DNA of 64,000 nt from Mytilus californianus. Taxonomy: Eukaryota. Made by a program: the position numbers and the translations under genes. The notes beneath the pieces were generated by a model, which saw only the letters and a program-made list of their open reading frames with translations, searched no databases and had not been told where the DNA came from. The stretch's first letter is position 1, and every line of letters begins with the position of its first letter. Shown in pieces: positions 1-30,984 of the stretch. The stretch spans positions 25,730,001-25,794,000 of the forward strand of contig NW_026262734.1 of the NCBI RefSeq assembly GCF_021869535.1, in the 5' to 3' direction.

Positions 1-140
1 TTCTTTCATTTTAAAAAAAAGTGCATTTCAATTCAAGAATTAACTATTTGTTAACATCCTCAATCTCAAAAGACTGTCAATAGCTCATTTCATTATTCCG
101 TTTTTATTCATTGTTAGGCTGGTGTTAATGCAACATTTTC

Positions 141-146
141 TTTATT
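141..146 (-). promoter_or_regulatory. candidate polyadenylation signal of TIMP-A
   Basis: AATAAA on the minus strand about 140 nt after the stop codon. Confidence 0.45.
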
Positions 147-287
147 CGTATTCAAACCCGACTGAGTAGAAAAACAAATAACTGGAGTGGCCTGTCATAC
201 CTTTTCAAATTTTATAAAAACATGAAAACAAAGACAAAAATCTTTATAATGAGTAGCTGTTGTAATATGTAATGTGCTTTAATACGA

Positions 288-418
288 TTAACATTGAGCA
301 TAAGTTCCCGTTTCTAGTGCTGTTTGTGTATGACTGCCAACTCCCTGCCAATTTTGAAACCAATTGCAGAGATCTGTATAGTAAAATGTTCCAGTTGTCC
401 GTCCAGTCACTGCTGCTC
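288..418 (-). CDS. TIMP: TIMP-A coding exon 4 (...DLCNW...YAQC*)
   Basis: 131 nt; tttcag| acceptor; TAA at 290-288. Confidence 0.9.
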
Positions 419-3400
419 CTGAAAATTAAACAAAAAACACCTCTATATATTTCTATATAAAAACAAGAAAATGTGGTATGATGCCATTAAGACAACTATC
501 AATCAAAGTCAAAATGAAGTGAATGAAGCGATTAAAGGTAACCGTACAACAATGAGAAAAGAGAAAAGAGAAAAGACATACTGTATAGTTGCCTATAGAA
601 GGCCTCGACATGAAAAAATGTGTAACAAATAAATTGAGAAATTTCACCGCCTAATATATAACTAAACAATTTACGAAAAACACATATGACAGACATGAAC
701 CAACGTAAACCACTGAACTAGAGGCTCCTGATTCGGGGCAGGCACATACAGATTGTGGTGGGGTGAAACATGTCTGAAAGCGCAAACCCTTCATCTAACT
801 TGGTACATTGGTGCAACGGCACAACTTAAGAACAAGCTACAAAACTATTAGCAAAAATCAAACACGAAAAACAACAATATACAACAACCACTCGAGTACA
901 GGCTTCTGACTTTGGACAGGCACATATAGCATGTGGCGGGGTTAAACATGTTGTTGTTTTTGCTTCCGTATGTATCAGCAGTTTTGTATAAAAGTCTTTT
1001 AAAAGTAACTTCGCTTAAACACTGATTTATTTTATATTTAAACGAAAATGCAGAAATGGACATTACTTTGTAAATTTAGCTGGCTGAGATATTGCAATTT
1101 TATAATGAGGTTCAAATGTCGAATTATTGTATGATGATAAAGTCATCATTTTTATCTTCCATATTGACATAGTTTGCCTGTTTTTGTACCAAAAAGTAAA
1201 ATCACAAATATACTGAACTCCGAGGAAAATTCAATCGGACAGTTCCTAATCACATGGCAAAATCAAATGGCAAAACACATCAAACGAATGGACAACAACT
1301 GTCATATTCCTGACTTGGTACAGGCATTTTCAAATAGAAAATGGTGGATTGAACCTGGTTTTATAGCGCTAAACCTCTCATCAAATTTAATAATATTGAT
1401 AATGATGCGTGAACAAAACAAACAGACACAATAGGTAAAAATGTCACAAATAAAGGTAAGAAGTCTAATTCGGTAGGTCACATTCGGGAAAAGGGAACGG
1501 GATTGCAGTTACGACATAAGGAACATATCTGATATCATCCATATAACAGACATTCCATAATGGTCAACCAACTCGTGATGGCGTCCGTAAAATTTACGAA
1601 GTGATGATTTCAGCTTCCCAATACCAACAGTCATAAAAAAAAACTCTTTTTTTTTCTCTGAATGTTAAAAATGCATTAAACAGTGAAACTTTATAAAGAA
1701 GAAATAGAAATACTCACCTGCAATTAAATATTCAGTTCCTGTGTCTAGATGTACTCCACATGAATTATTCGGAGACCGAGAACGAAGTTTTATTGTATTA
1801 TTCACTATCATCTGTATTTATGGAAAAAAGAACAAATTACGAATAATGAAATTAAACAAATATCGTTTTATTACTACCAATCACAAATCGACCTGCTAAC
1901 AAATACCATATTTTATTGATGTATATCTCAAAAATGATTTTGAACCTTCTATCTCAGTTTTAACGAAATGGGTGTAAATCCAATATTTTGGGGTTTTGCT
2001 GTTGTGTGTCTCATTTGCTTTTTATGGTTTTGTTTATGCAAATGCAACTTCCATAGTATGGTGCAGTCCGTTGGATCCGTGCACTTAAGACGTTTGGCTT
2101 TACTTTACTGTGCTTATCCTGAAGGCTTTGGCCTATCACAATACCAATTGATCAAACAGTTTACCAAATTGCAGTTTGAATTCATCTCAACAAACATGAT
2201 CAACTGGTAAAATATTTTAGCAAATTGCATCAGTTGTTAGTATGAAGTGAGTGCAGTGAAGTAAAAGTAATGCTTATCATCCAACTATATTTACTTAATG
2301 TCTGTGCAATGGAAGTGAAATAAAATAATCACCTACTATCATGACTATATTATAAGGCACTGGTCTGAAGTTATTGTGTTATAAACTTCATAGTCTTGTT
2401 ACTCAGTCTTTAGTTTTCTTTGTTGTATTTTGTGTGCTGTTGTTTGTCTTTTGGCCTTGTTGTGTTATTGCCATGACGTTGTCAGTTCATGTTCGACTTG
2501 AATGTCTTTTTGGTATTTTTCACCTTGCTTTCTCTATCATATAATGTGTCGAATCTCTGTGGCATCAGCTTTTAGAAACATTGTCTTCATTTATGGGTCT
2601 CTGACGACCAAGTTTAAATTGCAGAGGTGAATGATTTAATTCGGAATATTCCCATATAAATGTTCATTCCGCTTTGAACTCGCGACCCCACAGACATTTT
2701 CTACTAATTATAAAAAAGAAGATGCGTTATGATTCATAAAACTGTTAAACGACAATTGTTCACTAGAGACCAGGTCACTCTACGCCAATTAAAGATGAGC
2801 AACTCTAACTACTTACTGCATAATTGTATAATACCTTAAAATTATCTTCCACATTCACATCATACTCAATATCACCGCTTGCAAGGGTCCTGTTGTTTTG
2901 GGCAATTCCTCGTATAACTTAATTAGCAAAAAAAAAATGATTTTGTTCTAAAGGTTTCCAGTAGGCAGACACAAAATAAAAGTGTAATAAATTCAAACAA
3001 ACAAGAATCTGACAATGCCAATGATACTCCCCGTAAAACATGTGATATTACTGCTTATTTTTCAATTGTATAATTGTGTAACTTATGGGTGACGTTTCAT
3101 CCCCAGGGTATTACCATTCCAGTAGTTAGTTCCATCTATACTTTGACACACCAAATATCACTGATATGTTCATTTTTTTTTTAATTGAATGTTTTATAAA
3201 TTTTTGAATTATTCTAAGCATCAAGGTTTTTGTAACACCGGGTTTAGGGTGTCCAACTCGTATTTGGCACATTTTTTTTTTCAATTTTGCGTTTTTTAAT
3301 GGTTATTGTATTTGGTTTGGCTTAATCACTGTTTCGATTCGAATGCAGCTGATGAGTATAATGTACATGTATATGCTCAGGGACAATACAATGTCAGATT

Positions 3401-3596
3401 CCTGGGAAAATAGTCACTAATACTTTTTTCAGAGTCACAAGATACATAAATTCATAACATTTAATTCTTTAAACTTACCGAAATCAGCGTTACAGAATGA
3501 ATTTATTTGTGTAAAGTTACTACATCTACATCCATATGCCTCAGAAATGAAGTTCATCAACATCAGACAAAACAAACTCACTATGGTTGTCTTCAT
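288..3596 (-). CDS. TIMP: TIMP-A: secreted single-domain (N-domain-only) TIMP-like protein, 141 aa, 4 coding exons
   Basis: join(3596-3479, 2917-2835, 1811-1718, 418-288), all GT-AG, phases 1/0/1. Protein MKTTIVSLFCLMLMNFISEAYG-CRCSNFTQINSFCNADFVIRGIAQNNRTLASGDIEYDVNVEDNFKMIVNNTIKLRSRSPNNSCGVHLDTGTEYLIAGAAVTGRTTGTFYYTDLCNWFQNWQGVGSHTQTALETGTYAQC*. Signal peptide, mature C-X-C start, FC..DFVIRG, VEY-like, FK, SCG and EYLIAG motifs, six mature Cys as in the TIMP N-domain. Confidence 0.9.
1718..1811 (-). CDS. TIMP: TIMP-A coding exon 3 (...NNSCGVHLDTGTEYLIAG)
   Basis: 94 nt; tacag| acceptor, G|gtgagt donor. Confidence 0.9.
2835..2917 (-). CDS. TIMP: TIMP-A coding exon 2 (VIRG...DNFK)
   Basis: 83 nt, same length as exon 2 of B, C and D; aag| acceptor, AAG|gtatt donor. 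Confidence 0.88.
3479..3596 (-). CDS. TIMP: TIMP-A coding exon 1 (signal peptide + CRC...FCNADF)
   Basis: 118 nt; ATG preceded by acceptor ttcag|gataacc; donor G|gtaag. Confidence 0.9.
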
Positions 3597-6500
3597 GGTT
3601 ATCCTGAAGGAAGACATACAAAATGTTTTCATCCTGCTATTGACCTTTCTACTATACATATACCGAGTAGCAGATAACATGAACCGAAAAACGTACACTA
3701 GACGTTTGTAGTCGCCTGGTATCCTGCTTCTGTTGCGAACGAACGGTTATGTACAAATTACCGTTTGCGTGACAGTCCAATTTTGAGTCCTCATTGCGGT
3801 CCGCGTTGAAGTCATGTCGATCTCATTAGCCAACGAATTTGATGGGAGAAAACTAAACGTTTACGCCTAATGTTAAATTGCCGAATGAAACAATATTCGC
3901 ACATTGAAGGAAATACAAAATTTAAAGGTACTTGCTACGTGATAGCAGAAAAGCTCGGCAAGCCTCACTTTTCTCTCTGTTTCTAACGCTCTTCTAATAA
4001 GTTTAGTATTTTAGCATGTTTAGGTAGAAAGCATCAATACTTCATATATCAGATTTTAAATATCAGTTGTATTTTGGGTAAAACATCTAAATAGCTATTA
4101 AACAGTAAAAATAATAGTTATTGTTCTTTGTAATTTTAGATTATTAACAATAGTTAAAAAATAGTGACATAGTCGTTATACTTATATTTGAATTCAGGAA
4201 TGTATTTTTTTTTTTTGTGTTTTTTAGCAGTTAAAGTCATAATGAATTGAGTTTCCTGTAATTTTAATGTTATCGAAATTATTGAATCAATGCATTCATA
4301 TATACTAAACCAAGTCCTTTATGCACGTTTTTTATATTATTACGAAACATATTATTCACAAATGATATATCATTCAGTGATTGTTAATCGGCAGCTAAGT
4401 AAATTTCGAGTTTCTTACCAATGATTACCGGATCGCGACATTGATACACAGTCAACGCAGTGCATATGGAGCACGTAACAAATAAATAAGTGAATGAACA
4501 GAGCCATGATATTTACATTTTCCATGCGTTACCTTTTGTTAATTTAAGTTTTCTTTAACAGCTGTTAAATGATTTGTTGTATTACATGTGCTCTTTAAGA
4601 ATCAGTTATTACTATTTACCTTCCAGTGTACAAATGTTGACATTCTTTCATCACGGTTTTCCCCTCGCATTTGCGCTGTATGGTGGCCGAAGTTCTAACG
4701 AGACGTCTCGTAGTTAAGGTCACTGCATACGTGAACATATCGGATAATAAGTGTACGGGAAGACAATAATTAAATAGCAGTACAGTTAAGAAAATTTTAA
4801 GAATATAAAGGGTGTTTGTCTAAAAGAAAGTACACTTGTTACAAAGTAAAACTTAGCTATTCAAGTATATAAAACATATTTATTTTTTAAATTTGAAGTT
4901 TCATATGATTTTCCTAAGAAAGTAGTAAAAAAACACATTTGTCAGCTTTGTGCATGGCGTCAATATTTTGTTGGGTGAATTATGGTGAATTATTGACCTT
5001 CTACCATAACTAATTTAATGTGATACAAAAATGTACTAATGATATTTGACTGATGTGAATTGGAATACTGAAAACAATGACTGATTGACTGGAAGAAGAC
5101 AGACGACAGGACAAGTCTAGTTTATATTGAATGAACGGTCACTCTGCAAGTGCTTAAAATACAATACAATACACAATATAATTTAATAGAAATACAATAA
5201 ACACTAAGATGCAATATGAATACAATAATCAACACAATTTTTAACAATGATACATTTAAATTACTGAAAAATGTATCGTGTTAAGCAAAAACCACATTAA
5301 ATATATATGTCCCGTTTCTTTTTCTTGGTGAATTTTGGTTTTTAATTACCATGCCTATCGATTCTGCAGAAAATATTTCTGAACTTTGATCACTCAAAAT
5401 AAAAATTTGTGCTGAGACGAAATATTACTCATATTGCTTTTCAGGTGTTGAACATATAAATGAAATCACAAATAGCCAGCCACAATAGAATATAAATAGC
5501 AGAACTTAAAAAGCAGAAAAAAATGATAGGTCCGTGTCCTTGTTTTTGAGATGTAAGCCGTAGAAAATTTGGCGGGAAATGATTCTCTCTAGATCTTTCA
5601 TAGAGTTAGCATTTGCAACTTTATTCTTTCAAAAACTATGAAAAAATAACAAGGATTTTATAAGATTTAAGAAAATGGCTTTCTAAACTTTATTTAATGA
5701 AATTATGAAAAGAAAAGTAGGGTTTAACGGGCAAAATTATTATTGGCACTACATGGATAAAACTAGAATATCTGAATTTCTGACAAAAAGTCAAAAACAA
5801 GAGTAGCAAACATCCTTACCATTTAAAATACAAACTTTGATTGATAAGACAGAAGAGAAATATACTTTGTTACTTGCAGATTCTTTTGATTATTTGAACC
5901 CTTAATAATGCTTTGAAAATGTAACAATCACGCGCTACATTTAGTATTTAAGAAGCTTAGACAATTAATTGACTCTATTAGATTTAGAGATAATCAGTTT
6001 CTGAATGATTTACGATATTAAATTTCACTGAATGTAATATAAATCAACTTTATACATGTACTTGAAATATTAAATGGGCATCAACTGTCAAATTCCTGTC
6101 CACCGATATGACCCAAATTTTAAAATTGTATTCATAAAATACAATAACGTATATCTTAATTGCAAAAAGTCCAAAAGGAACAATGTATCATCATTTCGTA
6201 CGTATTTTTGAACTCACGCCACCTTATTATCAATCGAGATAGAGATTGCATGTATAAGAATGATATTTTTGTAGGCAGGATCAGTCAAAAAAGTGTTTAT
6301 TCGCAATGGCTCCCTTATTCTACTTTTCAAAGTTGATATGTTTTTCTTTTTAATGAATAAACCACATAATGGACACATGTGCATCATTTGCACTAAATGT
6401 CAAATCAAAAGGTTCCATAAATACGGATTTAAATGAGTTGAATTGTTGACTTGTACGGCAATAAAGGCAACAGTAGTATACCGCTGTTCAATAGTCATAT

Positions 6501-8039
6501 ATCGATTAAGCGAAAACAAATCCGAGTCACAACCAAAACCGAGGGAAACACATCAACTAGAAGAGGAACACAACGGAACAACAGAAACACTGAACTGCAA
6601 CAAAAATAAACGTAAACAATAATATATCATCGATATTTTCTAAGCTTATTTAGACGAAATTGAACCAAATTTATTGCAAATAGCGGAATATAATTTCTAT
6701 ATTCCGCTTAATGAATATTTGAAGAAAAAACATCATGTTTTAATCTGTTGTCTTTCTCGTATTAAACGCCGCTTTAATTAATTATCAAAATGTGTGTACC
6801 TACCTGGAAATAGACAGGCGATAACAATAATGAAGTTTGTTAACTGAAAAATACTTTGCAAGTGACTACAAATGCCACAAAACATACCAAAGTCATGTGA
6901 CTTTATTTCCCGGTGAGGTACGGTACAGGTTTATTACTTGATTTGACAAAGACCGTAATAAGTGAGACACCTTTACAGTCCTCATTTGAGATCACACAAA
7001 TCTGTCGCATGATGTTAATTTTGTATAAGCGTTTATTGAAATGACTGAGGGTTTATCATTGTTACGTAAGAAAAGCTTAAGAACTATGCTCAGCTGTGAC
7101 CATCTATTATTTATCAAAACTTTTATTCTAGAACAGATTTCCGCCTTTGAAAAAACTTAATAGTTATTTACAACACAAAAAGCTTTGCATACAAAAATCT
7201 GTTTTTTTTTTTTTAAATCGAGATATTTATTTCTTTAATCAATTTGTCATTAAATTATTAGATTTATCATTTGCCCATCAATTTATTTGTAAATGGCATG
7301 TTAAACAAACAGGTATGTAAACTGTCATCCTATAACATATATCCTTCCCCCCGAGATTGTGTTTTTATTTCAAAAACAAGATTGCAAACCGTAGATATAC
7401 CATAGACATATAGGATGAAAGCATTGTATCATGATCAGCCATTGTTTAGGCTGATTGATAACTGTTTCTAGAAAAAAATATTTATATGGAGTGCAAGGCG
7501 ATTGATATCTTTAACTGTGGCAGTTCCAAAGATGATTTTTGAAATTAAAAAAAATAACATCTGTAGCTTTGTATCTTTCATTCAATATGTACATTTTCTT
7601 ATTGGAACAAGTTGGTGAATGGTATCAACAGTTTTATTTACATTGGATGATAAATGTGCCCGCACTACAGATAATGGGATATCGCATGTTTGAAAATATA
7701 AAAGTGATGATGAACAATATCACCTAAGATGTGTTGTTCATCTTCTGATTTCCTTAGATTTGGAACATGAAATGTGTTATCAGAATTTTTGTGCAAAAGA
7801 GAGGCGAAAGATATCAAAGCAACATGCAAGCACACATGTTGGAAAAAAACTGGCAATGCCATGGCAATTAACGAAAATAGACCACCAACAACACTACACA
7901 AAACACAACATAGAAAAACAAAGGACTGAGTATCACGAACCCTACCAAAAACCGGGGATGATCTTAAGTGCTCCGAAATGATAAGCAGATCCGGCTCCAC
8001 TAGTGGCACCTTCGTGTTGCTCATGTAAGTAGGAACCCA

Positions 8040-8330
8040 TGATAATTCTAATCCGATAAGTCACATTCGGGACAACAGAACATATTCGTCGTCATATGTA
8101 GAACAAATATTCCATAACGGTCAACCAAATCGTGATGGCTTCCGTAAAATTTTTGAAGGGATGATTTCAACATTACGACTTAGAATTCTTGGTTTAATAG
8201 CTTCCTTGTGAGCAACAACAGACTATTAAGGATATCAAAAATGAAATATGTCTTTTTGGAGAAAACAACTCCATAATATCTGAGCTGCACACTTTGCCTC
8301 GTTGGCTCAAATTGGTGAAAGCAAAACAGC
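8040..8330 (-). mobile_element. short 3' fragment of the same Penelope-like family (another at about 1480-1620)
   Basis: LLLTRKLLNQEF and DNA similarity to 60860-61010. Confidence 0.6.
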
Positions 8331-10251
8331 AATACCCAGATAATTGTGGCATAACTTGAAGCGCCTAAAAAAACCAATTTAGATTTTAGTAGGTAATGAG
8401 TACATGTGTGGTGATAGGGGCAACTAGTTCATTATAGCATTAACAACATGAATTTACGCATCTTTTTGACACCATTGCACATTCTTAATAAAAGAGGAAG
8501 AGATGGAACTATACATGATCTAAGATATGCAGTTACGATGAAAATCACATCATGTTGAAAGTAACATCAGATTTGAGAGATATTGAGTGTGACTGATTAA
8601 AATGATGAATCGTACAGATAAACAATTGAGATTTGTTATGTTATAAACAAATACTTTACACATTTGATATCAACCAATATGACTATTGACTTAAAATATA
8701 ACATATATAAAATTATGATCTTACACTGGTCAAGTTGATGACGACGTATGAGTTCCTGTAAAAGACAATGCCGTTATTTGAATAATAAGTTGAAACAGTA
8801 TTGTATTCACGCGAATTGAATTGGATTGAGCAATAGGCCAATCCTATGTAAGTCCTCCCCATGATAAGTCGAAATGATAATTACCCATGATTTGTTAGGC
8901 GACTAAAAAAATATCTACAACTAGTCGGAATGAGAACGTTCCATAATTTGTAAGGTGACAAGGTAAAAAGACAATGACCTACGACTGGTCGAAATAATAT
9001 TGAGCAATGACAGGTCCTGAGATAGATAAAAATAACCATGACCCAGAACTAATCCATATAAACTAGGGATGTCAACTCGGTGAACAATTACTAGTCGAGT
9101 TCTCGTTGGTTTTATCAAGCGATACTCGATTACTCGTTCGGAAATATATCTTCAACACAGAAACACAAAAATACGTACTCTATATTCAGTGGGTTGTTGT
9201 TCAACGGACGAAAAACCATCTACATAAGTATCTAGGACAAAGAATTACACGACATAATTAATAGCTCATTAACTACAACTATTTATTAAGTAAAAAACAA
9301 TAATCTGATAAATATAGATTAAAGAACATATTTTATAAAATGTTTCAAGGGAAACCAAATCAATCAAGTGTAATGTGTACAAAAGCATAAGGATTAGAAG
9401 TTTAACTATTCACTGAGGGTCACCATAGGATGTAACGAATTTGTTTTATTTGGAAACACTTTCTTGTCGGTTAGGTATACATGGTATATACCTAATGTAT
9501 TCTAACATATATTAGACCAAAGACTGGTCGAAATTACAGTACCTTACATCTGATAGACATGCAAATGACCTATAGCTGATCGATTTATACTGACTAATTA
9601 TTGGCTCGATAATCTTTGACAGAACAATAAGGACTTTAAACTTAACACAAAAGAGTACATCATATATGACATTGATTGGCAGAACAACAACAAAAGGCTG
9701 AAAACTTTGGAAGAACCATGTGGATTTAATCTTGAGAAAGAACATCTCATTTTTGTTGCAACATACTCAATTGAATCGCAATAAAGAAATATAATTCTCA
9801 CACCGTAACAATAGGCAACAAATAAGTCGACAGTTGTTTAACGATGCTCAAATCTCGTAAATCGATGAATATAAAAAAAAATTAAAAAAAAAAACACAAC
9901 GTAAGGTGAAAATATTCAAACAGTGAGTCAAGAACCAACAACACCCTAAAAGTGTTAATGTTTTTATTTACATGGCATAAAAAAAATTCAAATGTCGAAT
10001 CTTGATGTGCGGATATTGTTTACACATTGAAAAAAATAAGGGTTACTGGTTTTTGTTTTAAGCATTGACTTAGAAAAGGTTGACAGATAGTAAAGATGTA
10101 CTTTAGTAAGGACAAATTGAAAATGTAAGTAACAACAATTTATCAAATTATAAAAATATTTTAACAGTTAGATACAACACATTCTATTATATCTTATTAA
10201 ACATGGAAACAAAATTCTATATTATATACTGAAGCAAAACAGTTATCTTAC

Positions 10252-10392
10252 CTTAGGTTATTGAATAAATAGATGTGTCTTTGTCTGAATTATTTAAATG
10301 TTTATATATACACTTGTGAACCGGATTTCGTAATAAATAATTCATATCATTCACTCTTAAAACATCCTTTATATGACAGAGTTGTGTTGTTG
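10252..10392 (-). promoter_or_regulatory. predicted promoter and non-coding first exon of TIMP-A
   Basis: Minus strand: CAACAACACAACTCTGTCATATAAAGG (10392-10366), AAATCCGGTTCA (10328-10317), TATATATAAA (10310-10301), then donor CTAAG|gtaaga at 10251. Same module lies upstream of B, C and D. Confidence 0.65.
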
Positions 10393-12774
10393 CACATCAC
10401 TTGTTTGTCAAAAATCTTTGTTACCTTCTTAAAATGATAAGTTGTGTTGTATATTGATGAAGGTTATTTCCCCTTTATGGTTTTTAAAGAAGTCAAACGC
10501 ATTTATTATATAATTTCTGCATCTATGTCCTTACATAATATTTAAAAAAATAAACACAGGTACATCACTATAAGGATGCATATTGTACAAAGGACCGGTA
10601 GATACATTCTGTTTTGTAATTTCTTATTTCATCTTTTAAGAATAAGAAGATGTGATATGAATGCGAATGAGACAACTCTCTACCACATATCAAATGCCAT
10701 CGAAGTTTACAACTATAAGTCATTGTGTTGTCTTCAACAATAAGCAAAACCCACACCGTAATCAGCTATAAAAGATTCCGAAATAACATATGTAACATTT
10801 CTCAGTTCCAAGTTGGCATTTATAAAGGCGACAATAGCTTACATGGTCGTTTGCTCAAATCTTGCAACTCGATTAGAAAAAGACACATCAAAGTGACAAA
10901 CAACAACTGAGTGAATTGCATGAACCCCAAATATACCGAGACAGGGTGCGTTTACAGGGTAAGCTTTTCCTGCTATCTATGTTACGTCCAAGTTGGTCAT
11001 TGTCTCAGTTTTAAGTTGACTTTTTCATTTACAAGTTGATATTTCTCACATCCAGCTTTACATTTCTGACTTCTAAATGTCAATCAGAAATTTTAACTTG
11101 ACATTAAAAAAAACCGACTTGAATGTAATAAATGTCAATTTGGAACTGAAAAATAACTTATGCTGACAGCGAGAGGAATAATCAAAACAATGAAGGGCCA
11201 TTACCTAATGTTACACTGCACAACTGTTACTTTCCCCTCGAATTCCTTGTTCATAACATAGGAATCTTTGGAAATAAAAAGAAACCGTAAACGCAATTTT
11301 AATTTCTAAATATCTTAGGATTTTTTTTTTTAGGGTTTGTGTCTGATTAAAGCGCTCAAATCCTTTGCTACTGCAAAATGCTATTTTCGCAATTTCAATT
11401 ACTGATTTAATTATATTGACTGTATACAAAACCGTATTATATTAATTTATTAGATTTCCGTATAATATTTTTGTATCCCGAAGGAAAACAGGACTTTTGA
11501 TTTTTAAATCGTCCACTTCAAAACTAAAATTAGACGATATAAGTCCAATAATTTAGCTTATGAATGTTGCATTTTAAACGAAATAACCTTGACAAGGGGC
11601 GATGAGGGCCGTTTTTGGTCCCACCACCATATATGCTTAATATGATGTGTTTCCCTCGGTTTTAGTTTGTTACTCGGATTTGTTTTTTGCTAAATCGAAT
11701 TATGACTATTGAACAGCGGTATACTACTGTTGCCTTTAATATACAGCTTGAATCTATTAATGTTTCAGATTCAACCTGTTCAATAGCGAATGTATACATT
11801 TATACACTGAATAAATGAACAACAATTTAATGCACATTTGTTTGACAAAATTATTGTAATTGTTTCCTAGCAACCAAACTTTTTTCCATAGCAACGATGA
11901 TTTATTTACTATTTTATAAGATTCAACTTATTTAGTTTGCATTGAAACAGAAAATTTAAGATACACCGTTTAAAAAGTACTATAAACGTTAAGGATGAAA
12001 ATCAATGCTCAGTATCATCAACAAACCAAACTACAGACAAACAACTATAATTTATTCAAAAGAGTTTGGTAAGGCAATGCACTTCAAGAGTTCCTCTGTG
12101 GAATTAAATATATCCCATTGCTCTCATGGTGAAATCACTCATCATTACATTTGTTTCTTTAATTAATACACGTACACCATACAATCTTTTAATTATACAT
12201 CGTATTGATGATATTTTCAGATTTTGTTTCTCATGCTGGGTGGAGTCTCTTAAATATTTGTTATGCTTGGTGTGTATACTCGTACTTTTTATACAGTTAT
12301 GGCATACTTTTCAATCTGATGTGAAATTATTCAATTCTTCTCTTTTGACCTATTTGTTTATTAACAGTGGTGTTCAAACGAATATGTAACCGAATTATTT
12401 CATCTATTCATACACTATTTCGACCGAAAAAGTGTTTTTGTAATTTGTTGATATTATTCAGCAACTTTGTTCTTGATTGCCCTGATCGACAGTGCTAGGG
12501 ACCTTGCTATTGTAATAAAATATGGGCTGATGCTTTTTTGTTATTTAATGTTTACTTATTTAGCTTTAATTCTCGTTTCTCTATTTTTATACATACCAGC
12601 TTTGATAAGTGTTTGGTATGACTATAAATTTTCACTTCTGTTCTCGTACTATGAACAACAACATTATTGATTTTGTAAAAAAAACATCTCACCCCTTTTT
12701 TTATTGATTTTGTATTTACATTGTGTCATAGATCTAATGTATTCCTTCAGTGTATGTTCACTTGTTTGTGTTAA

Positions 12775-22192: not shown

Positions 22193-22440
22193 AATTGTAT
22201 TTGTTTTACTTCTTCAATTCCTTACAAATGCAATACATCATAATTCCTGTTAACATGTGTTTGCGTATGAGAATATCCTTGAAGGACAGTATAACAAGGA
22301 TATATCAGATAAATTACTTGACAATTGTTTGAAACTTTTCAACCAGGAAACTGTCTACCACATGTAACCGGACTTCTTAACATATTTAGTAACAAATGCA
22401 TATGGCCAATGGTGGTGTATTGTTTACCAGAATTGGTGCA

Positions 22441-22575
22441 CAACAACACAACTCCGTGATATAAAGGTCGGGTTTTAAATTACACGTAGAGACTATGGTT
22501 ACAAAATCCGGTTCATAAGTATATTAATAAACGATTTCATATTAAGATCGTGATAATATTTCCATCTTGAACCAG
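22441..22575 (+). promoter_or_regulatory. predicted promoter and non-coding first exon of TIMP-C
   Basis: CAACAACACAACTCCGTGATATAAAGG (22441-22467), AAATCCGGTTCA (22504-22515), donor CCAG|gtaaaa at 22576. Confidence 0.6.
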
Positions 22576-25500
22576 GTAAAATATTTGTTATGTTCACTGT
22601 TGATTTAGAATTTTGTTCTATTTTTAAAAGATGTTAAGACCTCAAATTTTTAACTTTTCCTTAATATGTTGTAACCCTATAAGCTTTAAACATTTCCGTG
22701 AATTAAAATCTGTTGGTCACTACTCCTTAATTTCTCAATATATTTTGAACAAAATGGCACATCTCGATTACTTTTCTTTCTATATAACTTTAAATTCACG
22801 TTTTTTGTCTTTTATATGTTTCATAAAGTTTACTCGACTTCTATTTGTCTGCATACAAATCTTCGCAATAACTTGGGGACATCAATGTTACCGCCAAGTG
22901 TTTTTTTTTTATCTAAAAAAAAAGGACCGTACAAACCAATTCCTTATAAACAAAAGCACTTCTATTATAAAATATAAAAATGATGTAATTTTGAACATTA
23001 TCAGCGATTATATCTAAATATGTTGTTATGCTTCTAAAGGTTTATAACTTGATGTTTCATACTGTTTGAGACATTTTTGACTAACTAATTTATAATTTTT
23101 GATATTCAACTTATGTGTAAGTTTCATTTATCATTTGGGTTTACTGAAATGACTTCAAAGCACATTCACACATGAAATTATTAATCCTTGTTTCTTTTCT
23201 AACCATTATTATAATTAGTATACCCGAGATACCCGATATTTCATTTATTTGGCATTCTGTTCAAAAACGAAAGAGATATAATCATCCAAAATGTAAAACT
23301 ATTTTCTTATTAAATACTTACTAGCAACACATCAATACTTTATATGTCAGAACCAATATCAATTAGATTTAGGTCCAATTTTTTTTCGATTTATACTTAA
23401 GAGATGATTGATAATATAATTTACAATTATGACCAAATGTTCATATTATTTATTTTCATAATGAATATGTAAAACAGTGATTATCGATTGTTATGTATTT
23501 CAGAATATTCGGATTATGTTGATTATTTTTAAGATTTCATACGTTTTATTGTACGCACTTAGTAATTAACTATGTGAGAAAATTTCCATACTGCGTGCAT
23601 TTTTGTTACTGTGGGATCAGAAATCGTAAAAGTGTCATATAGTAAAGGAAACATTATGAACGTCGTAAAGATTCATTTCTCTCATGTAGGTTAATTTTTT
23701 TATAGTTAGGTCCGTTTTATCTATACAAAAACTCATCAAAGATACCAGGCTTATTTTTTATCACACCAGACGCGCGTTTTGTCTACAAACGATTTATCAG
23801 TTACGCCCGAATGAAAACAGTTGGAAGGCCAAATCAAATATGAGGTTGCAGAGCAAATTCTAAAAAGTTGTGAAAAATACAGCTCAGTCATTCTATGCGT
23901 CGGGATAAAAAAAAAATTATCGTTTCTAAAACATTTGTTTGCAATTCAACGTTTTATGAGCAGTAAATTCAAAGACAATGAACATGTCAGTGATATTTCA
24001 TGTCAACACAAAAGTGCTGACTACTGGGAAGGTGATATATTATCGTAAAATAAAACACAAAAAGCAGTTATTTTACATCTTAAGTTGGGTACAAAGGGGG
24101 ACCGTATGAAAACAATGCAGTACAAATAAATTCGTTAAAACTATAAGTTTAAAGAGTGCAAGATATAAGAATAAAGTATGTATTGTTCATGCATCAACCA
24201 GGAATATAGCTATATCGTACTGAAAATATTAGCTCTTTTATGCGTACTACTTGCTTCAATAAAGTAGCAAGAAATACAAAGCTTTGACTTACAATTTACG
24301 ATGTCTACAAGATAGAAAATTCATTATCAGATGAGCATTATGGCGAGGTCATAAAATAATGCTTAGCTCATGTTAGGAGTTGAAAAAGTTATTAAGTTTT
24401 ATCAATTATTTAACTACTCGAATCTGTCTTCCGATAAAATGTCCCTAATGTTTTCGAATTGCCTAAATGTTATAATTTTGTAAATATGAATTACAGGAGA
24501 TATGGGGTACATGTCATATATGTGTCACAAATGAGCATTTAAAGATAAAGAGGTTGCATTTGATATAACTGTTATAAGAAACCTTAATGTTTGTCTATAT
24601 TACAAAATACTCGTACTGCAGTATCGCGGTCTCGTCTGGAGCAAGTTTTATAAGTCCTCGACATCGTTTTGAAACATGACCATGATGCTGGCTTGAAGAC
24701 ACTTTTCTGCCTCCCAGAATTTATAGTTTATTCATATTTGGTATAATTTCTGTTGAATCTTTGTTTTTAAAGCTCTTCCCTTCGTGAATTTTTAGCCATC
24801 TGTTTTGAATCGAACGTAACTAATGCGTCTTTTATAGATACAGCTCACGTCTGGCGTGCTTACTCGTTAAACTGGTTTCTTCAATGAGTTTTTCTTATTA
24901 CATAAGGATGAAGGAAAAGAGATATATTGTATATGTCAATGCGAAAGTAACACAAAACATAGTTGACAAAATGACATGCAGATTTCATCATTAAAACAGA
25001 AAAACAAGTGTCTCTACATTATTCCATTACCTAAACCGAAATAGTAAATGTATATGTCTACAAGACACGCTCAAAGCCAAAGATATATAATACCGTTTGG
25101 AGCTTTATGATAATAGCCAAATATATTTTAAGTCAAATTTCGATTAAGGAGTTGGAACCTTAGTCTCGTAATAATTATGAAAGTTATGACATATACGTTA
25201 TGCATAATGTACTGACTTTTAATGCATGCTATGACTGAAACTTATACACATGGAAAATATTGGGAAGTGCAAGACGCCATTTAATGTTGGGGTCAAAGGT
25301 TAGAGATCAAATTCAATGTTACCGCAAATAGAATTAGTCAAATGATGGAAGATGTTATTAAAAATAGATAATTTTGTAAAACAAGTTTCGGGATGGTACC
25401 TTTAGTTTCCTTGATAAGTTTATAATGAAATATCCTGACACGAAATGTTCGTATCTACAAATATACTGTTGACTTTAAGCCTCCAGACCTAGAATATTAG

Positions 25501-25855
25501 CAATGGTCAAGAGAACTCGTGCCACATTTGTGTTTATTGTATGCATAAAAGGGTTTTTATATATATTGGGACTGTGAAGAAAGTATTGTTTAATTTTTTT
25601 GTTTTTAGACAAATACATGTAACTTTGTATAGTTCCTTGAAAATGATCAAGTATCTTATTGTGAATTGTTACCCTTTTTTACAGGTTGAAAGTTAGCAAT
25701 AATGGTTTCTGTTTCTTTTTGCGTCCAAGCGTACTAGTATTTTGAACTATTGAAGTAAAATGGTAAATTTTCAATAAAGATGCAGTTTGAGGAGCCACAC
25801 AGGATTTTGTTTTGAACACTATATAGTTTCATAGACTATGCTTTTCATTTTAAAG

Positions 25856-25938
25856 TATCACGAGGAATTGTCAAAAACAAGAGAATCTTTGCAAGCCGTA
25901 AAGTTGAATATAACGTGGAAGTGAAAGATAATTTTAAG
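25856..25938 (+). pseudogene. TIMP: TIMP-C exon 2 remnant
   Basis: 83 nt, aag| acceptor, AAG|gtagt donor, open frame. Confidence 0.8.
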
Positions 25939-26469
25939 GTAGTATATACAATGTAATATATAGTATTACTATATACAGTATAAGTTTTGCTCATCGTTTA
26001 ATTACGTACGGTGAAATATTTATTTACACCCTCGTCATTTTGTCTCTCATAGATGTTTTCGTTAGCAATCATGCCACATTTCCTTCTTTTTTTTTATAAA
26101 TATAAGATCACTTTTTGGTCCCATGAATTCAGAAGTCCAAAAGTATTATGAAACTACCAAATATCATTCTTGACATTTTCACAAATCTTCAGTTTGCCAA
26201 TATCAATATTTATTATTTGAATTGATGTGTAAATTTTGACGTCAAAGTAAGTATCTGTACTTAATTGACAAGATGTAATTATAGTCTTCATTTGTCGATC
26301 AAATTAACATTATATATTGTATGCAGAGACTCGGGAAGAGTTTACTTTTTGTATGGTGTCAGTGCTACAAATTTGCTCTAACTGTACTCTCCCCTTCTTT
26401 AGAAAAAAGAGTTATGAAATGTCATTATTTTACAAACAGTATCCAATTATATATACATACATGTATGTT

Positions 26470-28997
26470 GCACAAACAACATTTTCCAAAAGACCAAAAA
26501 AGGTGATAGGTATATTTTAACAAAAGGCATTTGACTAACAGGTCGAACAAAAAATGTTCTTAAACCCTGCTGACTGCCATTGGCGATTGCCAAATAAACG
26601 GATCACAAGATGTAACAAATGGATCTTTATAATAATTTAATACCAAACAGAAAACAATAAACTTGCAGAAAAGATGGTATACCGCAAACAAAAGGTGCAA
26701 ACATTTTTTAGTACACCATATCCGGATTTCGACAATTTATGTCTCTTCAGTGATGTTAGGAATCGAACGGTATTTGGAAGGCCATATAATTTACCTCAAT
26801 TTAGGATAGACTCTTGAATTTTGAAGAGTCGAAATAAGATGAACGGATCATATTAACCCGAAGGCAAATATAATACAAGCCCAAACGAAAAAATATAACC
26901 AAGTCTAAATTGAAAACAAATCCGGATATGGTGTACTAAAAACATTTTTGCACCTTTTGTTTGCGATATACCATCTTTTCCGCAAGTTTATTGTTTTCTG
27001 CTTGGTATTAAATTATTATAAAGATCCATTTGTTACATCTTGTGATCCGTTTATTTGGCAATTGCCAATGGCAGTCAGCAGGGTTTAATAGATATAGGAA
27101 GATGTGGTATGAGTGCCAATGAGACAACTCTCCATCCAAGTTACAATTTATAAAAGTAAACCATTCTAGGTCAAGAACATTTATTGTTCGACCTGTTAGT
27201 CAAATGCGTTTTGTTAAAATATTCTTTTTTTACTTTTTTTTGTCTTTTGGAAAATGTTGTTTGTGCTGTATTTAGACCCCTCTACCAAGAAATTTGTTTT
27301 GCATGCACACGTATAAAAATTGCGGTTTTTATCCAACGCAATCATAGGTTTGAACGTTGTTTTCAATTTAGACTTGTTTATATTTTTTCGTTTGAGCTCG
27401 TATTATATTTGCCTTTGGATTTATATGACCCGTTCATCCTATTTCGACTCTTCAAAATTCAAGAGTCTTTCCTAAATTGAGGTAAATTATATGGCCTTCC
27501 AAATACCGTTTCGATTCCTAACATCACTGAAGAGACATAAATTGTCGAAATTCGGATATGGTGTACTAAAAACATTTTTGCACCTTTTGTTTGCGGTATA
27601 CCATCTTTTCCACAAGTTTATTGTTTTCTGTTTGGTATTGAATTATTATAAAGATCCATTTGTTACATCTTGTGATCTGTTTATTTGGCAATTGCCAATG
27701 GCAGTCAGCAGGGTTTAAGAACATTTTTTGTTCGACCTGTTAGTCAAATGCGTTTTGTTAAAATATACTTTTTCACTTTTTTGGTCTTTTGGAAAATGTT
27801 GTTTGTGCTGTATTTAGACCCCTCTACCAAGAAATTTGTTTTGCATGCACACGTATAAAAATTGCGGTTTTTATCCAACGCAATCATAGGTTTGAACGTT
27901 GTTTTCAATTTAGACTTGTTTATATTTTTTCGTTTGAGCTCGTATTATATTTGCCTTTGGATTTATATGACCCGTTCATCCTATTTCGACTCTTCAAAAT
28001 TCAAGAGTCTTTCCTAAATTGAGGTAAATTATATGGCCTTCCAAATACCGTTTCGATTCCTAACATCACTGAAGAGACATAAATTGTCGAAATTCGGATA
28101 TGGTGTACTAAAAACATTTTTGCACCTTTTGTTTGCGGTATACCATCTTTTCCACAAGTTTATTGTTTTCTGTTTGGTATTGAATTATTATAAAGATCCA
28201 TTTGTTACATCTTGTGATCTGTTTATTTGGCAATTGCCAATGGCAGTCAGCAGGGTTTAAGAACATTTTTTGTTCGACCTGTTAGTCAAATGCGTTTTGT
28301 TAAAATATACTTTTTCACTTTTTTGGTCTTTTGGAAAATGTTGTTTGTGCTGTATTCAGACCCCTATACCAAGAAATTTGTTTTGCATGCACACGTATAA
28401 AAATTGCGGTTTTTATCCAACGCAATCATAGGTTTGAACGTTGTTTTCAATTTAGACTTGTTTATATTTTTTCGTTTGGGCTTGTATTATATTTGCCTTT
28501 GGGTTTATATGACCCGTTCATCCTATTTCAATTCTTCAAAATTCAAGAGTCTTTCCTAAATTGAGGTAAATTACATGGCCTTCCAAATACTGTTTCGATT
28601 CCTAACATCACTGAAGAGACATTAATTTTCGAAATCCGGATATGGTGTACAAAAATCTTTGCACCTTTGTTTGCGGTATGGCATCTTTGCCGCAATTTTA
28701 TTGTTTTCTGTTTGGTATTAAATTTATAATTAAGATCCATTTATTACACCTTGTGATCCGTTTATTTGGCAATCGCCAATGCCAGTCGGCAGGGTTTAAG
28801 AACATTTGTTGTTCGACCTGTTAGTCAAATGCGTTTTGTTAAAATATACTTTTCCACTCTTTTGGTCTTTTGGAAAATGTTGTTTGTTCTGTATTTAGAC
28901 CCCTCTAACAAGAAATTTGTTTTGCATGCACACGTATAAAAATTGCGGTTTTTATCCAACGCAATCATAGATTTGAACGTTGTTTTCAATTTAGACT

Positions 28998-28999
<2 letters not shown>
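26470..28999. repeat. 542-bp satellite array: one inverted partial unit (26470-26918) followed by about 3.8 direct units
   Basis: Identical ORFs recur at 27491/28033 and 27789/28331 (period 542); 26470-26918 is the reverse complement of about 449 bp of the unit; absent at the paralogous site near 56030. Confidence 0.92.

Positions 29000-29029
<30 letters not shown>
29000..29029. repeat. (TA)n microsatellite
   Basis: about 15 TA units directly after the satellite. Confidence 0.95.
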
Positions 29030-29034
<5 letters not shown>

Positions 29035-30254
29035 TGATAAAGGTTAAAAGTACTTGTTTTAAAACATAGTGTTATGACTCAATTCATAGACGTCTTTGAA
29101 AAGCCAACAATTTAACAAAAATATACAAAAGAAAAACGCAAGGTCAGATATGACAACACAATTTCTTAAATTTTATATACTGTATTGTTGTTGATGTCAG
29201 TCATTTCCAAATGAATTTTACAGATTATCACCCAAGTATGTCAACTGATTAATGTTTATTCCAAAGGTTCACAATTGACAAATCCAATTCTTATAATATA
29301 GTTCTCCAGCAGACTTTCCATAGATAATGTTAAATCCACAGTTAATACAATTTAATCATTAAATTATTAAATTCATTTATTGTATTACTTATCAAAACTA
29401 AGCAAGCCTAATTTTTACACATTGCTATCATTAATTATATTCAGGTAAAAAATATACAATGTCTACAATTTACACAAGGCCATTAGGTTTCCCACTAAAT
29501 GTTAGCACGAGTTTCTTGCTATTAAATTCGATTAGACATAAAAAAAAAAAAAAAGCAGTTTCAATGTAGCATATTGTTAGTTGTTGGAAAATCATCAAGG
29601 AGTTTGGACGGAAAAACCCTCCCATCCCTCCCTTTAAACATATTTCTGCTGTTTCTGAATTTATTTTACAGGTTGCAGTTCTCATTAATATTTTGGACAT
29701 TCAATCCATGTACATGATAAGAAGATCATCAAAAATCGTCATGGAAGAACCTTCTTGGACTTAATTGATTATTGAGATGGCGGATTTATCAAAGCTCACT
29801 GCTTTGGTTGACCCAGCAGAGACAATTGTTACACACTGACTGGTACACCCGTCAGTGTTTGATAGTCAACTGTTGATAATTTATGTTATTTGCTTGAAGA
29901 AAACTAAATTGCCATGACAAATAAGCAGCCAAAAAACTAATCAAGTTGTTGTTGTTTATTGTATCAATGAATAATAAGAACCTACAAATCTTAAATAATA
30001 TCTTTGCTTAGTTTGATATTCATTGTTCATTCTAAACCAGATCAAGCGAACGTATTTCCGTATAACAAGCATTAAACAATTTCTTTTACACACATCAATT
30101 ATATACAATAATAATGAATAACATAAATTCCTTCGACATTCAAACCTCTTTCTTTTATAAAACTGCAATATCTTAGCCATGCTAATATAAAATGTAATGA
30201 CGGTTTTTGCATTTTTTTTCCAATCTGAAATAAATCACTAATTATGCGAACTTT

Positions 30255-30490
30255 CTTTAACGGAACCTGATGTTTCTCGTTTCTCGTTTTTTTATATAGA
30301 TTAGACCGCTGGTTTTCCTGTTTGATTGGTTTTACACTAGTCATTTGTGGGGCCCTTTATAGCTTGCTGTTTGGTGTGAGCCAAGTCTCCGTGTTGAAGT
30401 CCGTACTTCAACCTATAATTGATTACTTTTACAAATTGTGACTTGGATGGAGTGTTTTCTCATTGGCACTCATACTACATCTTCTCATAT
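30255..30490 (-). mobile_element. truncated SINE-like repeat copy, specific to TIMP-C intron 3
   Basis: terminal half of the repeat; absent at the matching point in TIMP-A intron 3 (about 1000). Confidence 0.7.
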
Positions 30491-30984
30491 CTATTTCATA
30501 GAAAACTGCAGATACTCAGGGAAACAAACAAACAAACAACATGTTTAACCCTGCCACGTTCTATATGTGCCTGTTCCAAGTCAGAAAACTGTAATTGAGT
30601 GGTTGTTGTATATTGCTGTTTCTCATATTTGTCTTTCGCTATGTTTTGTAGTTAGTTCCTATGTTGTGCCATTCCACCACTATCCCAGATAAGAGGGAGG
30701 GTTGGCGCCTTCCGACATGTTTAACCCCATTACATTCTGTATGTGCCTGTCCCTAGTCTGCAGCCTATAGTTCAGTGGTTAGGCTGTGATTTTTTTCAAT
30801 TTAATTGTTTCATATTTTTCAAGTCGGGGCCTTTTATAGCCAACTATACGGCATGCTTTTTCTCACTGTTGAAGGCCGTACAGTTACCTATAATCGTTTC
30901 ATCCACTTCATTTTAACTTTGATGGATAGTTGTCTCTTGTTTTTATATAGAAATATATAGAGATGTTATTAATTCATATTTCAG

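What the first reader, a model, noticed from the sequence alone, without database searches (positions are those of the whole stretch)
288..10392. TIMP-A looks chimeric: B-type promoter fused to a C/D-type gene body
Seen: A's promoter, first exon and about 490 bp of intron 1 (9765-11420) are collinear with B (43205-44930), and the similarity stops near 9765. A's coding exons resemble C and D (TQTALETGT.AQC, EYLI.G, MKT.IV.LF) more than B. A's intron 3 (about 420-1150) and 3' UTR match C (30130-31260) in inverted orientation, including the same repeat insertions. A, C and D share a repeat remnant just after exon 2 and B does not. A's intron 1 is 6.6 kb against 0.72 kb in B. Inference: an inverted duplicate or conversion tract of the plus-strand gene was placed under the minus-strand promoter, a promoter swap that could give a C-like protein B-like expression while C decayed.
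Basis: partly seen in the sequence, partly recalled or inferred. Interest (0 to 1): 0.7.

Follow-up and report, generated by a model that had tools for sequence, protein, structure and literature searches.

The report
Chimeric mussel TIMP gene by inverted duplication
In a California mussel cluster of protease-inhibitor (TIMP) genes, one gene has the promoter of one subfamily and the body of the other, because an 11-kb inverted copy of its left-hand neighbour lies behind an older promoter; this is a clear but ordinary kind of new-gene origin, and neither the junction nor its expression is confirmed outside this assembly.

Summary
A's promoter, about 30-nt non-coding exon 1 and first 487 bp of intron 1 (9765-11420) match B (82% over 883 columns). 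A's coding exons belong with C and D.

The donor lies outside the window. Window 9764 down to about -1071 is a 96-98.4% identical inverted copy of a plus-strand gene, A' (C154:25711052-25725916; RefSeq XP_052072492.1). The copy ends exactly at 9764|9765, where the similarity to B starts, with no shared bases at the join.

Trees disagree strongly:
- Promoter tree: A+B 100/100.
- Coding tree: A+A' with C, D and G (99/98).
- A with B for the coding exons is rejected (AU p 1.65e-5).

A' sits in its native context and is the source, but it is decayed: no core promoter or exon 1, a nonsense codon, exon 4 in three copies and a 2.9-kb insertion. A is intact.

Limits:
- No contig listed from other samples spans the junction.
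- The arms differ by 1.4-2.9%, no more than alleles do here (2.73%), so a polymorphic variant or an assembly error is not excluded.
- Expression is not shown, and A's 141-aa product is not in the protein collection searched.

Verdict: a new member of a known kind (a duplication-made chimeric gene), of moderate interest.

The parts
288..418 (-). A exon 5 (last coding exon, ends in TAA). It carries ...TQTALETGTYAQC with the sixth Cys.
   Evidence: The acceptor is TTTTCAG. It is C/D-type by motif and by tree.
1718..1811 (-). A exon 4 (MIVNNTIKLRSRSPNNSCGVHLDTGTEYLIAG).
   Evidence: A has one copy; A' has three.
2835..2917 (-). A exon 3 (VIRGIAQNNRTLASGDIEYDVNVEDNFK).
3479..3603 (-). A exon 2: 7 nt of 5' UTR, ATG at 3596, signal peptide, then the Cys-Arg-Cys mature N-terminus.
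1..9764 (-). The in-window part of the right arm of the inverted duplication. The arm runs on to about 1,071 bases left of the window start. It is a copy of A' (C154:25711052-25725916) and holds A exons 2-5 and 6.16 kb of intron 1.
   Evidence: 2501-9764 matches L002 8315-1052 at 98.4% over 7,275 columns; 96-97% for the rest; 99 substitutions in 7,272 columns.
9764..9765 (.). Breakpoint. A follows A' up to ...TTGCAACAT and follows B from ACTCAATTGAATCGC. There are no shared bases at the join.
   Evidence: three-way view; three B-type genes stay collinear with each other across the point and A does not; all five further cluster copies of this module, besides B, begin to match A at 9765-9768.
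9765..10251 (-). First 487 bp of a B-type intron 1, with donor GTAAG at 10251-10247. It holds a high-copy short repeat at about 9818-9906.
10252..10285 (-). Predicted non-coding exon 1, about 30 nt. The 3' end is fixed by the conserved donor. The 5' end is inferred from the TATA box.
   Evidence: No RNA evidence.
10286..11420 (-). B-type promoter. TATATATAAA lies at 10310-10301 and AAATCCGGTTCA at 10328-10317, with ATATAAAGG and CAACAACAC upstream. The region is collinear with B to 11420, and again at 15934-17072.
   Evidence: A+B 100/100, 85% over 513 columns.
37579..44931 (-). Gene B, the intact B-type comparison gene. Coding starts at the ATG at 42947 (exon 2) and ends with the last Cys codon at 37579 (exon 5); exons 3 and 4 lie near 41055-40969 and 39150-39056. 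Exon 1 donor at 43680. Promoter runs to 44931.
22195..31112 (+). C, a C/D-type pseudogene. Core promoter at 22504, exon 3 at 25855-25944, exon 5 ending at 31112. Exon 2 is deleted, exon 4 is not detectable, and a tandem array lies at 26470-29006.
47810..60289 (+). D, an intact C/D-type gene. Core promoter at 48154. Coding pieces at 53965-54087, 55599-55688, 57092-57163 and 60164-60283, with the stop a few codons further on.

Best explanation
Gene A is a young chimeric gene in a TIMP-like cluster of Mytilus californianus that spans about 400 kb. The cluster holds two old subfamilies.

1. A minus-strand B-type gene ('A-old') once stood tail-to-tail with the plus-strand C/D-type gene A' and head-to-head with C, just as B stands between C and D today. 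This earlier layout is inferred.
2. A 10.8-kb stretch of A' was copied in inverted orientation. It runs from about 1.7 kb inside intron 1 to 1.36 kb past the stop codon.
3. The copy was joined bluntly to A-old's intron 1, 487 bp below its exon 1. It replaced A-old's whole body (inferred).
4. The result has a B-type promoter, a TATA box, a non-coding exon 1 of about 30 nt and a canonical donor. These are followed by A'-derived intron sequence, a canonical acceptor and four intact coding exons.
5. The product is a 141-aa secreted protein with only the N-terminal domain of a TIMP, of the C/D type.

Shown: the two parental sequences, the exact breakpoint, which arm is the copy, the intact reading frame and the intact splice signals.

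Inferred: the mechanism (end-joining or a replicative template switch between nearby inverted sequences), the loss of the A-old body, and that the captured promoter drives the gene.

The source copy A' is now defective. It has no core promoter or exon 1, a Q130* stop that removes the last cysteine, exon 4 in three copies and a 2.9-kb insertion. A is therefore probably the only working member of this sub-branch.
For: - **Inverted repeat.** Window 2501-9764 matches C154:25718315-25711052 at 98.4% over 7,275 columns. The remainder matches at 96-97% down to about -1071.
- **Coincident edges.** The repeat ends at 9764 and the B-type similarity begins at 9765.
- **The edge belongs to A.** Besides B, all five further copies of this 5' module in the cluster start to match A at 9765-9768, and where their exon 2 is known about 255 bp of their own sequence still lies before it. 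B and the B-type genes in L015 and L012 align with each other across the point.
- **A' is in native context.** Its distal upstream (25709136-25709340) is C/D-type. Its downstream flank stays collinear with the flanks of C and of the gene in L008 for about 750 bp past the arm's end. Both ends of A's arm abut unrelated sequence.
- **Incongruent trees.** The promoter, exon 1 and 5' intron tree gives A+B 100/100, then a third B-type gene 100/99, against a C/D-type clade at 98/96. The coding tree gives A+A' 98/98 inside the C/D/G clade at 99/98. Forcing A and A' with B and B2 costs 49 lnL, AU p 1.65e-5.
- **Intact gene.** A's reading frame and all splice sites are intact.
- **Family.** The A' product is a TIMP by Pfam (PF00965, 47.2 bits, E 2.8e-12) and matches N-TIMP-2 from its Cys1.
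- **Assembly quality.** The region has no N. It comes from a 45x HiFi hifiasm assembly with contig N50 of 16 Mb, and a blunt join between unlike sequences has to be carried by reads (inference).
- **Independent sample.** Run X2 has a 348-nt contig (9403-9750) carrying all five A-type bases that separate A from A' there. X2, X6 and X9 all hold A's own promoter.
Against: - No listed contig from X2, X6 or X9 crosses 9764|9765. Contigs stop at 9750 and restart at 10043 or 9910, next to a high-copy repeat.
- The arms differ by 1.4-2.9%, no more than two alleles of this species do (heterozygosity 2.73%). Age cannot be read from this, and a retained haplotype is not excluded by divergence alone.
- At many sites that separate A from A', the other samples' contigs show one base, in a mosaic of both types. 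Arm depth is not clearly twice promoter depth. Contigs collapse variants, so this is not proof, but it gives no support for two fixed copies.
- Another species' run (X9) has the promoter at 96-99% identity but next to nothing at 8300-8900 and 9500-9700.
- No transcript evidence: the RNA run X11 gave 0 reads at 9900-10499.
- A's 141-aa product is absent from the protein collection, while A' is annotated.
- A against A' shows 7 missense changes, 1 nonsense change and 2 synonymous changes, so there is no sign of purifying selection.
Confidence: 0.7

Rival explanations
1. Assembly artefact. The right arm is the second haplotype of A', wrongly placed in inverted orientation, so A does not exist as a gene in the animal.
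For: - Arm divergence of 1.4-2.9% plus large indels is what two alleles look like in a species with 2.73% heterozygosity.
- Other samples' contigs show a mosaic of A-type and A'-type bases and no clear doubling of depth.
- No listed contig spans the junction.
- RefSeq has a protein for A' but none for A.
Against: - Both arm ends are blunt joins between unlike sequences inside an N-free stretch of a HiFi contig. Overlap assembly cannot create these without reads that carry them (inference).
- The 3-kb spacer is not itself a palindrome, so a U-turn in the assembly graph is unlikely.
- A haplotig of 10.8 kb would be shorter than the 14-kb read N50.
- A misjoin would have to fall by chance inside intron 1 of both genes, in the one orientation that keeps a spliceable gene.
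- Logan contigs collapse variants, so the mosaic and the depth are weak evidence.
Confidence: 0.17
2. The direction is reversed. A is the original complete gene, and A' is a promoter-less inverted copy of its body.
For: A is intact while A' lacks a core promoter and exon 1 and carries a stop codon, as a dead-on-arrival partial copy would.
Against: - A' keeps C/D-type distal upstream sequence and a downstream flank collinear with C and the L008 gene beyond the arm's end. A's arm is bounded by unrelated sequence at both ends.
- The end of the repeat would have to coincide by chance with the point where B and all five further cluster copies of the 5' module stop matching A.
- A's coding exons are C/D-type, while every other gene that has this promoter type and a known body has a B-type body.
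Confidence: 0.06
3. No chimera. A and B are whole-gene duplicates and B's body simply diverged fast, or A's body was overwritten by gene conversion from C or D.
For: Coding identities are low all round. A against B is 34-59% per exon and A against D is 37-60%. Long branches could mislead a tree.
Against: - B's body is 85-87% identical to that of its close paralogue B2, and it groups with six other B-type bodies, so it is not an orphan long branch.
- C and D keep alignable introns at about 73%, while A and B have none left of 9765.
- A's body is 96-98.4% identical to A', introns and transposon remnants included, over 10.8 kb with non-homologous ends. That is far beyond a conversion tract.
Confidence: 0.03

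Closest known systems
Chimeric genes made by duplication that recruits a neighbour's 5' regulatory region and first exon. This is the class described in Drosophila, for example jingwei and the chimeras formed by tandem duplication (from my own knowledge, not looked up here).
   Same: Two identifiable parents, a sharp breakpoint inside introns, a new pairing of promoter plus untranslated exon with a foreign coding body, a young age, and a parent copy that decays.
   Different: Both parents belong to one gene family, so the protein itself is not chimeric and only the promoter and the 5' UTR change. The copy is inverted and local (3-kb spacer) and seems to have replaced the recipient's body. Transcription is not shown.
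Tandem-duplication expansion of TIMP genes in pteriomorph bivalves (PMC10755359).
   Same: The same family in the same kind of animal, in a dense cluster that grows by local duplication. M. californianus was one of the species in that study's phylogenomic tree.
   Different: The terms 'chimer' and 'single-domain' do not occur in that paper's main text. It reports copy numbers and tandem duplications, mapped in Pteria penguin and Magallana gigas. The two-subfamily head-to-head layout and this rearrangement were not among the passages I read.
Large inverted repeats (palindromes) carrying gene pairs, such as those on sex chromosomes (from my own knowledge).
   Same: Two arms of at least 10 kb in inverted orientation around a short spacer, each carrying a copy of one gene.
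   Different: The arms here are 1.4-2.9% apart and differ by kilobase indels, so there is no sign of the arm-to-arm conversion that keeps classical palindromes nearly identical. One arm is fused to a foreign promoter.
Vertebrate TIMP-1 to TIMP-4, and the N-TIMP-2 structure 2tmp.
   Same: A signal peptide followed by Cys-X-Cys, the FCNADxVIRG motif, six cysteines of the NTR fold, and a Pfam TIMP match.
   Different: There is no C-terminal domain (141 aa in all), and identity is low (E about 1e-5 to solved structures). Protease inhibition is untested.

Membership tests
TIMP (Pfam PF00965), NTR fold | A profile match above the curated threshold. | tested here: met
   The A' product P0001 (XP_052072492.1) scores 47.2 bits against a cut-off of 23.1, E 2.8e-12, over profile positions 3-116 of 183. 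It also matches NTR PF01759 at 29.5 bits. A differs from it at 7 residues and has 12 more at the C-terminus. A itself was scanned exon by exon only, and exon 5 gave TIMP at E 0.058. The joined A protein was not sent to any search tool.
TIMP (Pfam PF00965), NTR fold | The mature N-terminus starts with Cys-X-Cys straight after the signal peptide. A free Cys1 amine chelates the protease zinc. | tested here: met
   The sequence reads ...ISEAYG|CRCSNF in A. P0001 residue 23 aligns with Cys1 of N-TIMP-2, 2tmp. The signal-peptide cleavage site is inferred and was not predicted with a tool.
TIMP (Pfam PF00965), NTR fold | Six N-domain cysteines forming three disulfides. | tested here: met
   A has Cys at positions 23, 25, 35, 85, 117 and 141 of the precursor. 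A' loses the last one through Q130*.
TIMP (Pfam PF00965), NTR fold | A C-terminal domain with six more cysteines, as in canonical two-domain TIMPs. | tested here: not met
   The reading frame ends at residue 141 and the Pfam match covers only profile positions 3-116. These are N-domain-only TIMP-like proteins.
TIMP (Pfam PF00965), NTR fold | Inhibits metalloproteinases. | not testable with these tools
   This needs a recombinant protein and an enzyme assay.
Duplication-made chimeric gene (promoter capture) | Two parental sequences and a discrete breakpoint. | tested here: met
   The breakpoint is 9764|9765, with A' to the left and the B-type module to the right.
Duplication-made chimeric gene (promoter capture) | Different histories on the two sides of the breakpoint. 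| tested here: met
   The promoter tree gives A+B 100/100. The coding tree puts A with C, D and G at 99/98, and the AU test rejects A with B at p 1.65e-5.
Duplication-made chimeric gene (promoter capture) | An intact reading frame and usable splice signals across the join. | tested here: met
   The exon 1 donor is AAG|GTAAG at 10252|10251. The exon 2 acceptor is TTCAG|G at 3604|3603. The other sites are canonical.
Duplication-made chimeric gene (promoter capture) | The junction is present in independent DNA, so it is not an assembly product. | tested here: inconclusive
   In one search, both flanks are present in X2, X6 and X9, but no listed contig bridges 9750-9910.
Duplication-made chimeric gene (promoter capture) | A transcript that starts at the captured exon 1 and splices to the foreign exon 2. 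| tested here: inconclusive
   RNA run X11 gave 0 reads at 9900-10499. Exon 1 is about 30 nt, and exon 2 lay outside the 6,000-letter stretch allowed.

The most novel reading that the evidence does not exclude
The inverted duplication is a structural variant still segregating in M. californianus. It rescued a dying gene. A' had already lost its core promoter, and the copy that landed behind the neighbour's B-type promoter became the only expressed, full-length member of this TIMP sub-branch. That copy has since taken several amino-acid changes, including a new N-glycosylation site (N-R-T). Animals with and without the variant would then be a natural promoter-swap experiment.
Probability: 0.2. 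Interest if true: 0.55.

Novelty: new member of a known kind. Interest (0 to 1): 0.42.

Why it matters
Bivalve TIMP families are known to have grown by local duplication, and mussels are known for large gene presence/absence differences between animals. What this locus adds is one such event resolved to the base. The donor, the recipient, the breakpoint and the direction can all be read. The protein stays the same kind while its promoter changes, and the donor copy decays.

If the junction is confirmed and the gene is transcribed, it becomes a clean case for asking how much a promoter swap between sister subfamilies changes expression. If it proves to be an assembly error, the reference assembly needs correcting at this place.

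Tried and rejected
- **Fetching the cluster.** Half of the cluster is therefore not held. The missing pieces around A' were recovered as loci of the genome search.
- **Reads.** Contigs break beside it and exon 2 lay outside the stretch, so neither the junction nor splicing was settled. I first read the one-base-per-site mosaic and the depths as a single locus in other animals. I withdrew that reading because Logan contigs collapse variants and the tool says depth is not copy number.
- **Contig look-up.** The look-up of encoding contigs on P0001 found nothing.
- **Protein searches.** Word searches with A's exon 2 open frame and with P0001 returned only P0001. No orthologues were obtained, so there is no comparison with other species.
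- **Pfam by exon.** Scanning exon by exon is too weak; the best result was E 0.058.
- **First AU test.** My first test was badly posed. It only asked whether C, D and G form a clade, gave p 0.19 and tests nothing. It was replaced by the test.
- **Gene conversion and fast divergence of B.** Both were considered and rejected, as set out under the rival explanations.
- **Heterozygous inversion plus a haplotype switch in the assembly.** Considered as a source of the pattern. It needs a palindromic spacer, which is not there.
- The joined (spliced) A protein was not sent to any search, family or structure tool. It was built only inside local scripts, from window coordinates, for alignments and trees. 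The large representative-protein search and structure prediction were not run, because the family assignment was not in doubt.

Full report
**Where we are.** The window is G000:C154:25730001-25794000. It is AT-rich (about 32% G+C) and has no N. The product of the neighbouring gene is RefSeq XP_052072492.1, 'metalloproteinase inhibitor 3-like [Mytilus californianus]', on a contig of the same length as C154. The assembly size and contig count fit xbMytCali1. Earlier notes of this scan had already called the genome a Mytilus.

**The observation.**
- 9765-10631 matches 43205-44066 at 82.3%.
- Three further collinear blocks run to 11420 and 44931 at 75-83%.
- After a 4.5-kb insertion on A's side, 15934-17072 matches 44932-46175.
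- Left of 9765, A and B share only exon 2, at 72%.

A's coding sequence on the minus strand is 3596-3479, 2917-2835, 1811-1718 and 418-288. It encodes 141 aa and all splice sites are canonical. A's 3' part 50-993 matches C 31391-30494 inverted at 72.5%, and both carry a remnant of the same repeat at the matching place. Intron 1 is 6,648 bp in A and 726 bp in B. B and D are intact. C has lost exon 2, and no exon 4 is detectable.

**What the window hides.** Searching the whole assembly with A's exons found a plus-strand twin just left of the window. Its exon 2 is at 25717222-25717338 (92% amino-acid identity) and its exon 5 at 25724422-25724553 (93%, with an in-frame TAA). I call this gene A'.

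DNA comparison gives the following.
- Window 2501-9764 is the reverse complement of C154:25718315-25711052 at 98.4% over 7,275 columns, with 99 substitutions.
- The rest of A, and 1,071 bases beyond the window start, match 25721186-25725916 at 96-97%.
- The two arms are about 10.8 kb (A) and 14.9 kb (A'), around a 3-kb spacer.
- A' is longer because it has a 2.87-kb insertion at the point matching window 2502, and the segment matching 1260-1827 occurs three times, so it has three copies of exon 4. The two extra copies have AT in place of the GT donor.

**The junction.** The inverted repeat ends at 9764 and the B-type similarity starts at 9765. A reads ...TTGCAACAT|ACTCAATTGAATCGC. A' goes on with CTTTTTATG, and B comes in from ...AAATGTATA. 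There is no shared base at the join.

The edge belongs to A and not to B. Besides B, all five further copies of this 5' module in the cluster begin to match A at 9765-9768. Where their exon 2 is known, about 255 bp of their own sequence still lies before it. B and the genes in L015 and L012 align with each other straight across the point.

**Which arm is the copy.** A' keeps C/D-type distal upstream sequence (25709136-25709340, matching C 22195-22410). Its downstream flank stays collinear with the flanks of C and of the L008 gene for about 750 bp beyond the arm's end. A's arm is bounded by unrelated sequence at both ends: the B-type intron on one side and transposon remnants on the other. So A' is in place and A's arm is derived.

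By analogy with the order C, then B on the minus strand, then D, the ancestor was probably A', then a B-type gene on the minus strand, then C. The B-type body has been replaced by the inverted copy. No B-type exon remnant is left between the arms. This step is inferred.

**Windowed trees.**
- I used 570 bases of core promoter, exon 1 and 5' intron from nine genes. A groups with B (100/100, 85% identity), then with another B-type gene (100/99). C, D and three further genes form the other clade (98/96).
- For coding exons 2-5, aligned exon by exon and concatenated, A+A' (98/98) sit with C, D and G (99/98), and eight B-type bodies form the other side.
- Forcing A and A' with B and B2 costs 49 log-likelihood units, AU p 1.65e-5.

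**The cluster.** In the roughly half of 25.67-26.08 Mb that I hold there are exons of at least 16 TIMP-like genes or pseudogenes, of two subfamilies, often head to head. Window 30494-61658 is duplicated at 25900313-25944000, at 77-93% by block. All core promoters share CAACAACAC, ATATAAAGG, AAATCCGGTTCA and a TATA box.

**State of the two copies.**
- A: intact.
- A': no core promoter, exon 1 or donor can be found between the distal upstream homology and the arm. It also has Q130*, which removes the last cysteine.
- The coding sequences differ at 10 of 426 bases: 2 synonymous, 7 missense and 1 nonsense.
- By comparison with the paralogues, at least four missense changes look derived in A (T7S, K31I, K32N and I50T, the last creating N-R-T). 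This is inferred and the sample is small.
- This is not the pattern of purifying selection.

**Family.** P0001 matches Pfam TIMP (47.2 bits, E 2.8e-12, N-domain positions only) and N-TIMP-2 from its Cys1. These are N-domain-only TIMP-like proteins.

**Is it real?** The arms differ by less than or about as much as two alleles of this species (2.73% heterozygosity). A retained haplotype therefore had to be considered.

I laid three DNA runs and one RNA run on 4500-10499.
- All three DNA runs hold both flanks.
- X2 has a 348-nt contig (9403-9750) with all five A-type bases.
- No listed contig bridges 9750-9910, where a high-copy repeat sits.
- At many diagnostic sites the contigs show one base, in a mosaic of both arm types, and depth is not clearly doubled. 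Because these contigs collapse variants, I draw no copy-number conclusion.
- X9, which carries another species label, has the promoter at 96-99% identity but almost nothing at 8300-8900 and 9500-9700. This fits a promoter older than the fusion.

Several points argue against an artefact.
- Both arm ends are blunt joins between unlike sequences inside an N-free part of a HiFi contig (45x coverage, read N50 14 kb, contig N50 16 Mb).
- The spacer is not a palindrome.
- The join falls in intron 1 of both parents, in the one orientation that keeps a gene.

I put the artefact at about 0.17.

**Expression.** It is unknown. RNA run X11 gave no reads at 9900-10499, but exon 1 is only about 30 nt, and exon 2 could not be in the same 6,000-letter stretch. 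A's 141-aa product is absent from the protein collection. The 90% cluster of XP_052072492.1 has one member, so A seems to lack a RefSeq protein.

The spliced A protein was never sent to a search, family or structure tool. Exons were searched one by one by reference. The joined sequence was made only inside local scripts, from coordinates.

**Known context.** Expansion of bivalve TIMPs by tandem duplication is published (PMC10755359). Chimeric genes made by duplication are a known class (my own knowledge).

**Verdict.** This is a well-resolved new example of that class, with the junction and the expression still to be confirmed.

Noticed in passing
C154:25670001-26084000 (window plus L001-L018): There is a cluster of at least 16 N-domain-only TIMP-like genes and pseudogenes of two subfamilies, often in head-to-head pairs. 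Window 30494-61658 is duplicated at 25900313-25944000, at 77-93% by block.
   Followed up: partly
window 26470-29006; L015 7066-9980: A tandem array with a period of about 542 bp (copies 92-96% alike, one part inverted at 26470-26919) fills an intron of pseudogene C. It recurs beside another TIMP gene 280 kb away.
   Followed up: no
C154:25698656-25698781 and 25678518-25678646 (L001, L018): Two cluster members have extra residues ahead of the Cys-X-Cys (…AFGGCQKC, …AYGRRCQKC). That would bury the free N-terminal cysteine a TIMP needs.
   Followed up: no
C154:25922891-25923031 (L009), 26015218-26015337 (L014), 25962920-25963039 (L011): In-frame stop codons lie in exon 4 or exon 5 of three B-type copies, including B's closest paralogue B2. 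Several cluster members are pseudogenes.
   Followed up: no
window 1191-1622: A repeat of about 430 bp in A's intron 4 is present in many copies genome-wide at 80-93% identity. It forms tandem arrays on C97 (1955347-1958200). The segment present three times in A' overlaps it.
   Followed up: no
window 9818-9906: A high-copy short interspersed repeat lies 54 bp from the breakpoint, on the B-type side. B has it at the matching place, so it predates the rearrangement. It is the reason short-read contigs break next to the junction.
   Followed up: partly
L003 (25798177, minus), L007 (25883053, minus), L013 (25997427, plus): These are C/D-type core promoters with no detectable coding exons in the sequence I hold downstream of them. 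The exon 1 donor GT is lost in L007 and shifted and doubtful in L013. They are probably solo promoter remnants.
   Followed up: no
window 2808-2834 and 40945-40968: The first 24-30 bases of the intron after exon 3 stay open in frame and are alike between subfamilies (VLYNYAVS in A, VIYNMSLKI in B). This may be an old alternative donor or a conserved splicing element.
   Followed up: no
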